DNA of 17,323 bases, taken from IMG/VR virus record IMGVR_UViG_3300005964_000010, positions 1 through 17,323 of that record; one strand, written 5' to 3'. Positions 1,881 to 5,204 of the stretch are shown here, piece after piece (position 1 is the first letter of the stretch; each line of letters opens with the position of its first letter). A program made the position numbers and the translations under genes. The notes under the pieces were generated by a model. The model saw only the letters and a program-made list of their open reading frames with translations. It ran no database searches and was not told where the DNA came from.

Positions 1881-1923
1881 GTTTTATATTTTATTTGCCC
1901 TCTTAAAAAACTACACACATCTA

Positions 1924-1950
1924 ATTCATAATATTATGAATATAGTATGT
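1924..1950. promoter_or_regulatory. Palindromic operator ATTCATAATATTATGAAT plus ATAGTATGT tail, copy 1
   Basis: Perfect 18-bp palindrome at 1924-1941, just upstream of the minus-strand TATA-like TTTTTAAG of the 545-aa gene. Recurs at 9236 and 12660. Confidence 0.65.
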
Positions 1951-1956
1951 TCTCAC

Positions 1957-4900
1957 TTAGTAATTAGCCCTTAACTGCCAATTCAATAGTATTAGTTGAA
2001 TTTCTTCATCAGTTAAACCGTATTGTTTTAATTGCTGTAAATATGATTGTGCAGTATTTAAATCAATTTTCTGCTTTTCAAATAATAAACTGATTGTTGA
2101 AATTATTTCGTTTATGTAAGTTCTAAGTCTTCTATTTCTTGCATACTCGAGATAAGTATTTTGTAAATCATTAGGAACTTGAAATTCATTAAATACTTTT
2201 TGTAATAATTGCGTTGGATTACTGATATATTCACTAATTTGTAATGCTTTAGATGGTGTTAAGTATAACTCTTGGTAAGCTGTTAATATTTTCTTAATTT
2301 GTGCTGATAATTTGAAAACTCCTAATAATGTTTCATTTATGCCATATTGTTTCATTATGTTCTCTAATTGGATATTTTGAACTCCATAAACTAACAATTG
2401 TACATAATCAGTCTTGAGAGATTGCACATATTGCCCTACTAGTTCATATTGATATAAGTTAGAGTATAAGTTAAGAAATTCAGAAGGTATAAATGAGTAA
2501 TCAATTAATTGTTTTTCTGGATAATTGTACTTTATTGCGGTCTCAATTGTACTTAATGAAGGCAAGTATTTTCTCCAAATTTCTAAACCGAATGTTGAGG
2601 CATATTGTTCCAAGAGAACTTTTATTTGATTTTCCGGAATTCCTAATTGTCTTAATTGTTGTTCTGCATTTCCTAGATTTACGGGTACTTTTCCGACTTT
2701 AAAGAGTTGTCCATTTATAATATTTCCAATAATTGTATGTAAACTATAAATTGTAGGAATATAAGTTTGAACAATTAAGTTTGCCAAATCTTTTTGCATT
2801 CCTAGGCTTTCAAGTCTACTTACCGCATTTGTTGGAGTTATTTGTAAATCTTTCAAGAGGGACTTTATATATTCTATTTCTGTCGTTAGTTGAAAAACTT
2901 GTATAGCGGGCTGAATTTCATATTGGACAATTTCTTTTGGCAAACTTGAAATATTTGCAGATATTCCATGTCTTGCTAATTGTGTATAATAACTTATTAT
3001 TTTTGGATATATGTACTCATAGTAGAACTTTTGAGTGTAAAGATCAATTGCGTTTTTATCTTTTAGAATTTTTGATAATTCTCCAGATAATTGAGTTTGG
3101 TCATAATAAAGCGTTTTAGCTATAGTTTCAATTAACGATAATTGTAATTTAGCTATGCTCACATTATAGTTTTCTTGTATTATTTGACTTGTCAGGTAAT
3201 CATTAATTTTCAATTTCTTTAACTCAGCATCAACACTTTTTGAATCTATCAAAAAGTTCTTTAGTTGTTCCTTTATAATTGAGAGTATTGAGGAAATTGC
3301 AATTTCCTGATTAACGTAATTTATAAATATATCTTCAAATTCCTTTATAACGCCTAATGCATGTAGTTGCTTTTTAATTTCATCACTTGACAAATATCCT
3401 TTTTTCGCTAAACTTTCAATTTGACTAATTTGATATTTTGTTAGAGGGGCTATTTGATATTCAAATATGATTTCAGAAATAATAGAAGGATCAAATCCTA
3501 AAGCTTTAACTCTTTTTCTGCATCTTTTGAACTAATAATGTAATTTTGTAGTTTAAATTGAAATTCTTTAAGAATATACTGTAATTGTACATATTGAAGT
3601 TCATAATTCAAAATTGTTAGTGCAATTTGTTCATTAAAATTATTGGCTTTTAACTCCGCTTTTACTTTCTTTTCGTCAAATATTCCTAACTTAGTAATTT
3701 GTTCTAATTGAGTTAGAAGAAGTTGGTTAGTGTATACAATTTGAGATTGTTCTATCATTATGTTAAAAACGCTTTGGACTTCTTCGGGATAATTTAATTC
3801 TTTAAATAATTTTTGAACTGTTGATTCTAGGAATTTTAGATCAATATATGGCCTTCCAAAATTAGATAACGCTCTCGATAAAAGCGATCTTAAAAATTGT
3901 CTGACAATTCTTTGAACAGAGTAATTATACTCGAGAGAGAAAACTTTTAGATATAAATCTTTTCCAGCTAAATTAACATTTTGTATTATTTCTTGATAAG
4001 CTTTTTCAGGAGTAATTATAAATTGACGAATGCCTTCCTCAACTGCTCTTTGCAAAAGTCTTGCAGTTTGATTATTATAAATTAATTTAGCAGTTTTTGG
4101 AGTTATCAAATTATTATATGAATATTGTGAAACCGCATCAAAATTCAGAAATCCGTATTGTGACCCTAAAATTACATCACGAATTGAAACAGGCCTAAAA
4201 AGCGGATTTCTTGGTATATAATCATCTATTGGATTTTCTAGATAAGCATCAGTAAACCATGCGGGAAAACCCGTCAATAGTATTGTTTCTCTGAGATGAT
4301 CTTTAATTTCATCAAATGACCTAGAAGATACCCATTTGGCAATTTGTACAAACGGCGGGTCAGCAAATGGTAAATCTCCTAGACCAATTTCATTGAAAAT
4401 TTCTCTAGCGGAAATTTTAAAATCGCTTATAAATGGCTCTTTTATAAACTCTTTAAGTGTAGTTTGTATTTCTTGTCTGACTTCATTTAAAAAGTCTACA
4501 CTAGTTTCAGCAAAGGCTTTTACAATTTCTCCAAATTTTATTGGGACTTTTCCGCCAAGTCCAACTGGACTAAGATCAATTTCTACCTCTGGAAGTATTT
4601 CAGCTAATTTATCAGTTATAATCGGTAAAAATTTTCCTAATGTAACTGGTGTAATAAATGGCGTTAGAAATTGCGAAATTTGTGAAATAGCACTAGAAAT
4701 ATGTTTCATATTTTGTCCAAATCCCGTTAGAAAATCAGAAACAACAATGCTTATTATTTGTGCAAAAGAGTTGGCAACATTTTGGAAAAATGAATAAGCG
4801 TCATTCATAAATTGAGATGCTAAAGATGAAAGATTTTGGAACACATTTACAACTTGAGTTTCAAACCAAGTTAAAAATCCAGAGACGACAGGAATTGCAG

Positions 4901-5132
4901 TTTGTACAAAATTCTGCAATATAGTCAAGAAATTGTTAGCAATATTTTGCATAAATGTTGGAATATCTGAAACTGCATGAGAAATGAAAGTTAGAGTATT
5001 CTGAATATCTGAAGTTATACTGTTCATAAAGTTAATAAAGTCTGAGCTGATCCAATTTGTAAAATTCTCTAATGCTGATAACTCATCTGAAAAGAATGTT
5101 CCTAAATCTCCTAAATTTAGTAGGAAACTCAT
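1957..5132 (-). CDS. Terminal (tail) fibre protein, SIRV2 ORF1070-like, about 1058 aa, interrupted by one -1 frameshift at ~3498-3531
   Basis: ORFs 3498..5132 and 1957..3393 join via a -1 shift: ...KDAEKELK|ALGFDPSIISEIIFEYQIAPLTKYQISQIESLAKKGYLSSDEIKKQL... Joined length matches rudiviral fibre proteins (~1060-1070 aa). N-terminus MSFLLNLGDL and synteny agree. Confidence 0.85.
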
Positions 5133-5204
5133 ATAGATTTAATATTTAACTGGAAAGATAATAAACATTGCCTTTAAAACAAAAAACATTTTATATTTTT
5201 AGAT

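What the first reader, a model, noticed from the sequence alone, without database searches (positions are those of the whole stretch)
3498..3531. Terminal fibre gene split by a -1 frameshift at a slippery-looking G_TTA_AAG two codons before a stop
Seen: the coding strand reads GAA AAA GAG TTA AAG CTT TAG. The -1 frame is open from 3531 through to 1957 and restores the repeat unit ELKALGFD. The frames overlap by only ~30 nt, and no other lesion is visible in either half. Known: this protein forms the receptor-binding terminal fibres and is one ORF in SIRV2; -1 programmed frameshifting occurs in Sulfolobales (fucA1); G_UUA_AAC is a functional viral slip site. Inference: three options are (a) a missing A from sequencing or assembly (most parsimonious), (b) a recent or phase-variable inactivating indel, or (c) programmed recoding giving 544-aa and 1058-aa forms.
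Basis: partly seen in the sequence, partly recalled or inferred. Interest (0 to 1): 0.68.

Follow-up and report, generated by a model that had tools for sequence, protein, structure and literature searches.

The report
One-base gap splits rudivirus fibre gene
The tail-fibre gene of this hot-spring archaeal virus contig is split only because one base is missing. That gap is seen in no other sequence, so it is probably an assembly error or a rare defective variant, not programmed frameshifting.

Summary
On the minus strand a 544-aa ORF (5132..3498) ends ...GAG TTA AAG CTT TAG. The -1 frame is open from 3531 to 1957.

The two pieces together are the rudiviral terminal-fibre gene (SIRV2 ORF1070, phrog_7334). 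They span 3176 nt, where intact homologues have 3177 nt (1058 aa).

Every relative that covers the site has one more base exactly there:
- 12 isolates;
- 23 IMG/VR loci;
- 3 further metagenome contigs;
- the only two Logan contigs from public runs that bridge the site.

The base is lost from a hypervariable codon (AAA, AGT, AAT, CAT, CGT or CGC in relatives). The nearest variants read AAG CGT TTA/CTA, where the window has AAG C-T TTA.

The deletion allele and its 544-aa product occur only on this contig (JGI 3300005964, Ga0081529_119699).

Programmed -1 frameshifting fails three tests. The heptamer is not X_XXY_YYZ, there is no downstream structure (z = -0.06), and the arrangement is not conserved. 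There is no repeat tract that could drive phase variation.

Both halves show purifying selection (dN/dS 0.12-0.17), so the lesion is very recent or artefactual.

Odds: assembly or consensus error about 0.6, real defective variant about 0.33, recoding about 0.03. Interest is low.

The parts
1957..5132 (-). Whole terminal-fibre gene (homologue of SIRV2 ORF1070 / SIRV11 ORF32). It is 3176 nt here and 3177 nt in intact relatives.
3498..5132 (-). Upstream ORF of 544 aa, the N-terminal half. It matches phrog_7334 profile positions 1-543.
   Evidence: Its exact product occurs on one contig only.
1957..3531 (-). Downstream open frame, the C-terminal half. It matches phrog_7334 positions 545-1078. The first possible start codon is TTG at 3393.
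3502..3503 (-). Position of the missing base: coding strand AAG C^T TTA. Relatives have a full codon here (CGT, CAT, CGC, AAA, AGT or AAT).
   Evidence: Alignments. Insertions in Logan contigs behind + strand positions 3500 and 3502.
3504..3510 (-). Heptamer G_TTA_AAG, ordinary conserved coding sequence for E-L-K. The same bases occur in relatives with an intact frame (L014, L033, L051).
3498..3500 (-). TAG stop. It arises from the out-of-frame reading of TTA GGA.

Best explanation
The window carries the ordinary single-ORF rudiviral terminal-fibre gene with one base missing from a hypervariable codon. The gap is peculiar to this assembled metagenome contig (JGI 3300005964, Ga0081529_119699). 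Most likely it is a consensus or assembly error, made where many co-occurring strain variants differ at that codon. The real virus then reads AAG-C?T-TTA (ELK-R/H-LGFD) and makes one 1058-aa fibre protein. Shown here: the gap, its uniqueness, intact frames in all relatives and in the bridging run contigs, and the strain swarm. Inferred: that the assembler rather than the virus lost the base.
For: (1) The gene is 3176 nt against 3177 nt in 10 of 12 isolates (two carry in-frame length changes). All 12 isolates have one more base at this column. (2) All 23 IMG/VR loci that reach the site are intact there, as are L049, L050 and L051. L049 is 90.4% identical over the whole gene with exactly one gap, at this site. 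(3) The only Logan contigs that bridge the site carry one extra base, giving AAG CGT CTA and AAG CGT TTA. They are X1 record 4 at 95% identity and X3 record 20 at 97.5%. (4) The deletion allele was found nowhere else. Pattern scans found only the window's own contig. The junction 61-mer is held by no indexed run (a weak test with 2 sampled words). The exact 544-aa product is on one contig among 153 billion gene positions. (5) X1 laid 1230 contigs at 90% identity or more on 3.3 kb, so this is a dense strain swarm. Support for the window's own letters is lowest in the bin that holds the junction. The window is mosaic: it is 100% identical to L035 over 4232..3658, then L014-like from about 3540. 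(6) Both halves have dN/dS of 0.12-0.17 against four relatives, so the C-terminal half has not decayed. (7) Frameshift splits occur in other metagenome contigs of this virus group. L033 has two in 7.6 kb, one of them in this same gene at a different site.
Against: The source reads of 3300005964 were not inspected, and none of the four runs laid holds the window exactly (best word share 0.51). The error is therefore inferred, not seen. Logan contigs drop rare variants, so absence there is weak evidence. The lost base is not in a homopolymer if the ancestor was CGT or CAT, which makes it an unusual kind of read error. The rest of the 17.3-kb contig has no other split gene, so the assembly is not generally poor.
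Confidence: 0.6

Rival explanations
1. A real, very recent one-base deletion in a natural virus variant. This would be a defective genome with a truncated 544-aa fibre protein, kept going by co-infection with intact strains in the same spring.
For: The deletion is not a typical homopolymer sequencing error. Intact relatives of the gene occur in the same sample: L020 is also from 3300005964, so complementation is conceivable. The rest of the contig is clean. dN/dS of 0.12-0.17 in both halves fits a lesion too young to leave decay.
Against: The allele appears in no other contig, run or protein record. A defective allele would need to be abundant to be assembled. The fibre protein is the proposed pilus-binding adsorption protein (PMC7911016), so its loss should be strongly selected against.
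Confidence: 0.33
2. Programmed -1 ribosomal frameshifting at G_UUA_AAG, producing a 544-aa termination product and a 1058-aa trans-frame fibre protein.
For: A_AAG is a known -1 shift-prone motif in bacteria, and a nearby stop can stimulate shifting (PMC1616953). -1 frameshifting exists in Sulfolobales (fucA1). The -1 product would be full length and would keep the repeat motif. Both halves are under purifying selection.
Against: None of about 38 relatives has the two-frame layout, and the same heptamer sits in relatives with an intact frame. The P-site codon UUA cannot re-pair on GUU, and Z = G is outside the canonical motif. The 104 nt downstream fold no better than shuffles: -10.7 kcal/mol at 37 C, z = -0.06. 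The host lives near 80 C (my own knowledge), where even that fold would melt. Such motifs are common in this AT-rich gene.
Confidence: 0.03
3. A phase-variable (contingency) indel, transcriptional slippage, or a gene genuinely split into two subunits with re-initiation at the downstream TTG.
For: The fibre gene is described as highly variable, and bet-hedging has been discussed for SIRV-like viruses (PMC9319562).
Against: There is no simple-sequence tract at the site: only A3 and T3 runs there and A5 upstream. No second population allele with the deletion was seen. The first start codon in the downstream frame is at 3393, which would drop about 36 conserved residues. No relative is split here.
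Confidence: 0.02

Closest known systems
SIRV2 ORF1070 (P1070) and its Usarudivirus orthologues (SIRV4-11 ORF32-42; 'minor capsid protein' of V3, V60 and V65; phrog_7334)
   Same: Colinear over the full length. Amino-acid identity to SIRV11 ORF32 is 85.7% for the N-terminal half and 84.7% for the C-terminal half. Same start (MSFLLNLGDL) and same end (NWQLRANY). Same neighbours: the Hjc resolvase side upstream and the DUF2341 (ORF564-like) gene downstream.
   Different: One base shorter, so it reads as two ORFs of 544 aa and 478+ aa instead of one of 1058 aa.
fucA1 of Saccharolobus solfataricus (programmed -1 frameshifting; PMC1616953)
   Same: Two ORFs in the 0 and -1 frames with a short overlap (about 34 nt here, 40 nt in fucA1), in a Sulfolobales setting.
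   Different: [quoted passage not shown] Here the heptamer is non-canonical, no structure is predicted, and relatives carry an unsplit gene.
Frameshift artefacts or defective alleles in metagenome-assembled viral contigs, for example L033 (Ga0074075_12536)
   Same: A single-contig, single-base frame break in an otherwise conserved gene. The same fibre gene is broken in L033 at codon 234-238 by an extra T.
   Different: The L033 lesion lies in a T run, and that contig has a second split gene. The window's lesion is outside a homopolymer and is the only one in 17.3 kb.

Membership tests
Rudiviral terminal-fibre protein (SIRV2 ORF1070 / phrog_7334) | Full-length colinear sequence homology | tested here: met
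   phrog_7334 positions 1-543 (E = 0) and 545-1078 (E = 1e-255). tblastn of SIRV11 ORF32 covers residues 1-539 and 536-1058.
Rudiviral terminal-fibre protein (SIRV2 ORF1070 / phrog_7334) | Conserved genomic position between the Hjc/ORF31-like genes and the DUF2341 (ORF564-like) gene | tested here: met
   compare.
Rudiviral terminal-fibre protein (SIRV2 ORF1070 / phrog_7334) | One uninterrupted ORF of about 1058 aa | tested here: not met
   Split at 3502/3503 by a 1-nt gap. Reading through with X at the break gives 1058 aa.
Rudiviral terminal-fibre protein (SIRV2 ORF1070 / phrog_7334) | Location in the three terminal fibres and binding to host type IV pili | not testable with these tools
   Literature only, for SIRV2 (PMC7911016; PMC4456609).
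Programmed -1 ribosomal frameshift site | Slippery heptamer X_XXY_YYZ in the 0 frame | tested here: not met
   G_TTA_AAG: positions 1-3 are not identical and Z = G (rule as stated in PMC1616953). Only the A-site part, A_AAG, is shift-prone.
Programmed -1 ribosomal frameshift site | Stimulatory RNA structure just downstream | tested here: not met
   MFE -10.7 kcal/mol, z = -0.06; 91 of 200 shuffles fold at least as well.
Programmed -1 ribosomal frameshift site | The two-frame arrangement is conserved among relatives | tested here: not met
   None of 12 isolates, 23 IMG/VR loci or 3 further contigs has it.
Programmed -1 ribosomal frameshift site | Both termination and trans-frame products are made | not testable with these tools
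   No RNA or proteome data. No RNA run was listed.
Phase-variable contingency locus | Indel within a simple-sequence repeat tract | tested here: not met
   Only A3 and T3 runs at the site and A5 upstream. The gap aligns to a non-repetitive codon.
Phase-variable contingency locus | Both length alleles co-exist in one population | tested here: inconclusive
   Only the intact-length allele was seen in contigs of runs X1 and X3. The source reads were not available.

The most novel reading that the evidence does not exclude
The deletion is real, and the virus expresses its fibre gene by -1 frameshifting on A_AAG just before a stop codon. This would give a 544-aa N-terminal protein plus a minor 1058-aa full-length fibre. 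It would be the first recoding event described in a rudivirus.
Probability: 0.03. Interest if true: 0.7.

Novelty: not a real feature. Interest (0 to 1): 0.07.

Why it matters
It matters little. The practical point is annotation: the two ORFs (544 aa and 478 aa) called on Ga0081529_119699 should be treated as one fibre gene with a probable one-base error, not as two proteins or a recoding site. If source reads showed the deletion to be real, it would be a modest example of a defective adsorption-protein allele persisting in a highly diverse hot-spring rudivirus swarm. Only the unlikely recoding reading would be of wider interest.

Tried and rejected
- Exact-pattern scans for the junction, allowing 2 or 3 bases at the variable codon, gave no match in viral contigs.
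- The same kind of scan in metagenome contigs gave 10 matches. Only the window's own contig has the short form. One relative (L045, the same contig as L033) has the intact form. The other eight are unrelated chance matches.
- A run-index search with a 61-mer in which every 31-mer spans the gap listed no run, but only 2 words were sampled, so this is weak evidence.
- Pfam gave nothing usable: only a sub-threshold BAR hit.
- The sample and contig identifiers were not found in the paper library, so the sequencing platform could not be established.
- A homopolymer under-call (A4 read as A3, or T4 as T3) was considered. No relative has the GCT or CTT codon this would require.
- An old pseudogene was rejected, because the C-terminal half has dN/dS of 0.12-0.16 and no further stops.
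- I tested whether the gap lies exactly at a chimeric join. The switch of nearest relative (L035 to L014-like) lies about 40-150 nt upstream, not at the gap. This is suggestive of a mosaic or chimeric region but not decisive.

Full report
**What the window is.**
The window is a complete 17,323-nt IMG/VR record, linear and estimated about 52% complete. It is contig Ga0081529_119699 of JGI metagenome 3300005964. Its closest named relatives are the Yellowstone Usarudivirus isolates SIRV4-11 and V3, V60 and V65. These are 80-82.5% identical in DNA over the gene in question. GC content is about 27-31%.

- The minus strand reads GAA AAA GAG TTA AAG CTT TAG at 3518..3498.
- The upstream ORF runs 5132..3498 and encodes 544 aa.
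- The -1 frame is open from 3531 to 1957.
- The two frames overlap by 34 nt.
- Neither half carries any other stop or indel.

**What the gene is.**
- Both halves match one family, phrog_7334 (profile length 1078). The N-terminal half covers profile positions 1-543 and the C-terminal half covers 545-1078.
- SIRV11 ORF32 (1058 aa) aligns to the window as residues 1-539 in one frame and 536-1058 in the next. Amino-acid identity is 85.7% and 84.7%.
- The SIRV2 homologue is ORF1070, a single ORF. A review names it as the tail-fibre protein that most plausibly binds the host type IV pilus (PMC7911016; see also PMC4456609).
- Gene order is conserved: the Hjc side lies upstream and the DUF2341 gene downstream.

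**The lesion is one missing base.**
- The gene spans 3176 nt. It is 3177 nt in SIRV1, 2, 3, 4, 8, 9, 11, V3, V60 and V65. SIRV7 and SIRV10 have in-frame length changes elsewhere.
- In the alignment the single gap falls between AAGC and TTTAGG.
- All 23 IMG/VR loci that reach the site have the extra base.
- Three more metagenome contigs have it too. L049 and L050 are 90.4% and 90.2% identical over the whole gene with exactly one gap, at this site. L051 is 85.8% identical.
- The affected codon is the most variable one nearby. It is AAA, AGT, AAT, CAT, CGC or CGT, giving ELK-K/S/N/H/R-LGFD.
- The flanking ELK and LGFD are conserved.

**Evidence from public sequencing runs.**
- Four hot-spring metagenome runs hold 24-51% of the window's words.
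- Their Logan contigs were laid on 1900..5200. Only two contigs bridge the site.
  - X1 record 4 covers 3392..3543 with 7 mismatches.
  - X3 record 20 covers 3387..3551 with 4 mismatches.
- Each has one inserted base. On the coding strand they read AAG CGT CTA and AAG CGT TTA, an intact frame.
- No contig reproduces the window's short form.
- A run-index query in which every word spans the gap listed no holder. Only two words were sampled, so this is weak evidence.
- The exact 544-aa product is on record for this contig alone.
- Its 90%-identity cluster otherwise holds full-length proteins of 1058 and 1077 aa.

**Context that favours an assembly artefact.**
- X1 laid 1230 contigs at 90% identity or more on 3.3 kb, so this is a dense strain swarm.
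- Summed depth is lowest in the bin that contains the junction.
- The window's gene is mosaic. It is 96-100% identical to L035 over 4232..3658. L035 then falls to 79-86%, and L014 becomes the nearest relative (93-95%) from about 3540.
- This could be natural recombination, which is documented in these viruses (PMC5454432), or a chimeric path through the swarm.
- The switch lies 40-150 nt upstream of the gap, not on it.
- Another metagenome contig, L033, has two split genes in 7.6 kb. One is in this same gene, caused by an extra T in a T run at codon 234-238.
- None of the 12 isolate genes aligned here is split.

**Context against an artefact.**
- The window has no other split gene among the 25 that have SIRV11 homologues.
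- The lost base is not in a homopolymer if the ancestor was CGT or CAT.
- The source reads could not be examined.

**Tests of programmed frameshifting.**
- The heptamer G_TTA_AAG fails X_XXY, and Z is G. PMC1616953 gives the motif as X-XXY-YYZ with Z 'any base but G'. It notes A-AAG as a bacterial single-site slip sequence.
- The 104 nt downstream fold at -10.7 kcal/mol at 37 C with z = -0.06.
- The same heptamer is present in relatives whose frame is intact. It is simply the coding sequence for E-L-K.
- Relaxed slippery heptamers occur in frame 37 times in this gene, and N_NNA_AAG occurs 11 times.
- A random 1-nt deletion meets a stop within 3 codons 34% of the time.
- dN/dS of 0.12-0.17 in both halves shows the C-terminal half has been translated through nearly all of its history. 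That is expected for a fresh lesion or an artefact as much as for recoding.

**Phase variation and transcriptional slippage.**
Both need a repeat tract, and none is present.

**Verdict.**
This is an ordinary rudiviral terminal-fibre gene with a one-base gap unique to one assembled contig. My estimates are:

| Explanation | Probability |
|---|---|
| Assembly or consensus error | about 0.60 |
| Genuine recent defective allele | about 0.33 |
| Programmed -1 frameshifting | about 0.03 |
| Other (phase variation, split gene) | about 0.02 |

The decisive test is to map the reads of metagenome 3300005964 onto 3400..3600.

Noticed in passing
L033:3690-3710 (IMGVR_UViG_3300005256_000001 = Ga0074075_12536): The same fibre gene is broken in this relative at codon 234-238 by an extra T (GAGCCTTTTTAT against GAGCCATTTAT). 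The contig also has a second split gene, the SIRV11 ORF27 homologue. Two frame breaks in 7.6 kb suggest an error-prone assembly.
   Followed up: partly
window 4232-3540 (minus strand gene): The fibre gene is mosaic. It is 96-100% identical to L035 (IMGVR_UViG_3300026821_000003) over 4232..3658. L035 then drops to 79-86% and L014 becomes the nearest relative (93-95%) from about 3540. This is either natural recombination or a chimeric assembly path, 40-150 nt upstream of the frame break.
   Followed up: partly
window 5132-4400 (N-terminal ~250 aa of the fibre protein): The N-terminal region gives weak hits (E = 1e-6 to 7.5e-5) to several PHROG families of tail length tape-measure proteins of tailed phages. 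This may reflect shared helical low-complexity composition or a distant relationship.
   Followed up: no
L003 (SIRV7), L017 (SIRV5), L006/L034 (SIRV10), L028/L029: The fibre gene varies in length among intact relatives. It is 1146 aa in SIRV5, 6 and 7 (a 264-nt in-frame insertion) and 1061 aa with a different C-terminus (...RSNLSSS) in SIRV10. It is 1016 aa in two metagenome contigs. This fits its description as a highly variable gene (PMC9319562).
   Followed up: no
window 1881-1956: Only 76 nt separate the fibre gene from the DUF2341 (SIRV2 ORF564-like) gene. The window lacks a homologue of SIRV11 ORF33 (270 aa), which lies between these genes in SIRV4-11. The arrangement is the one seen in SIRV2 and in contig L049.
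   Followed up: partly
window 3540-1957 (C-terminal half of the protein, aa 479-1058): A recurring unit of roughly 50-60 aa has the signature x-L-x-x-L-G-(hydrophobic)-x8-(I/L)(I/L)-x2-Y. It occurs at least 8 times, and the frame break sits inside one unit. The fold and role of the repeat are unknown.
   Followed up: partly
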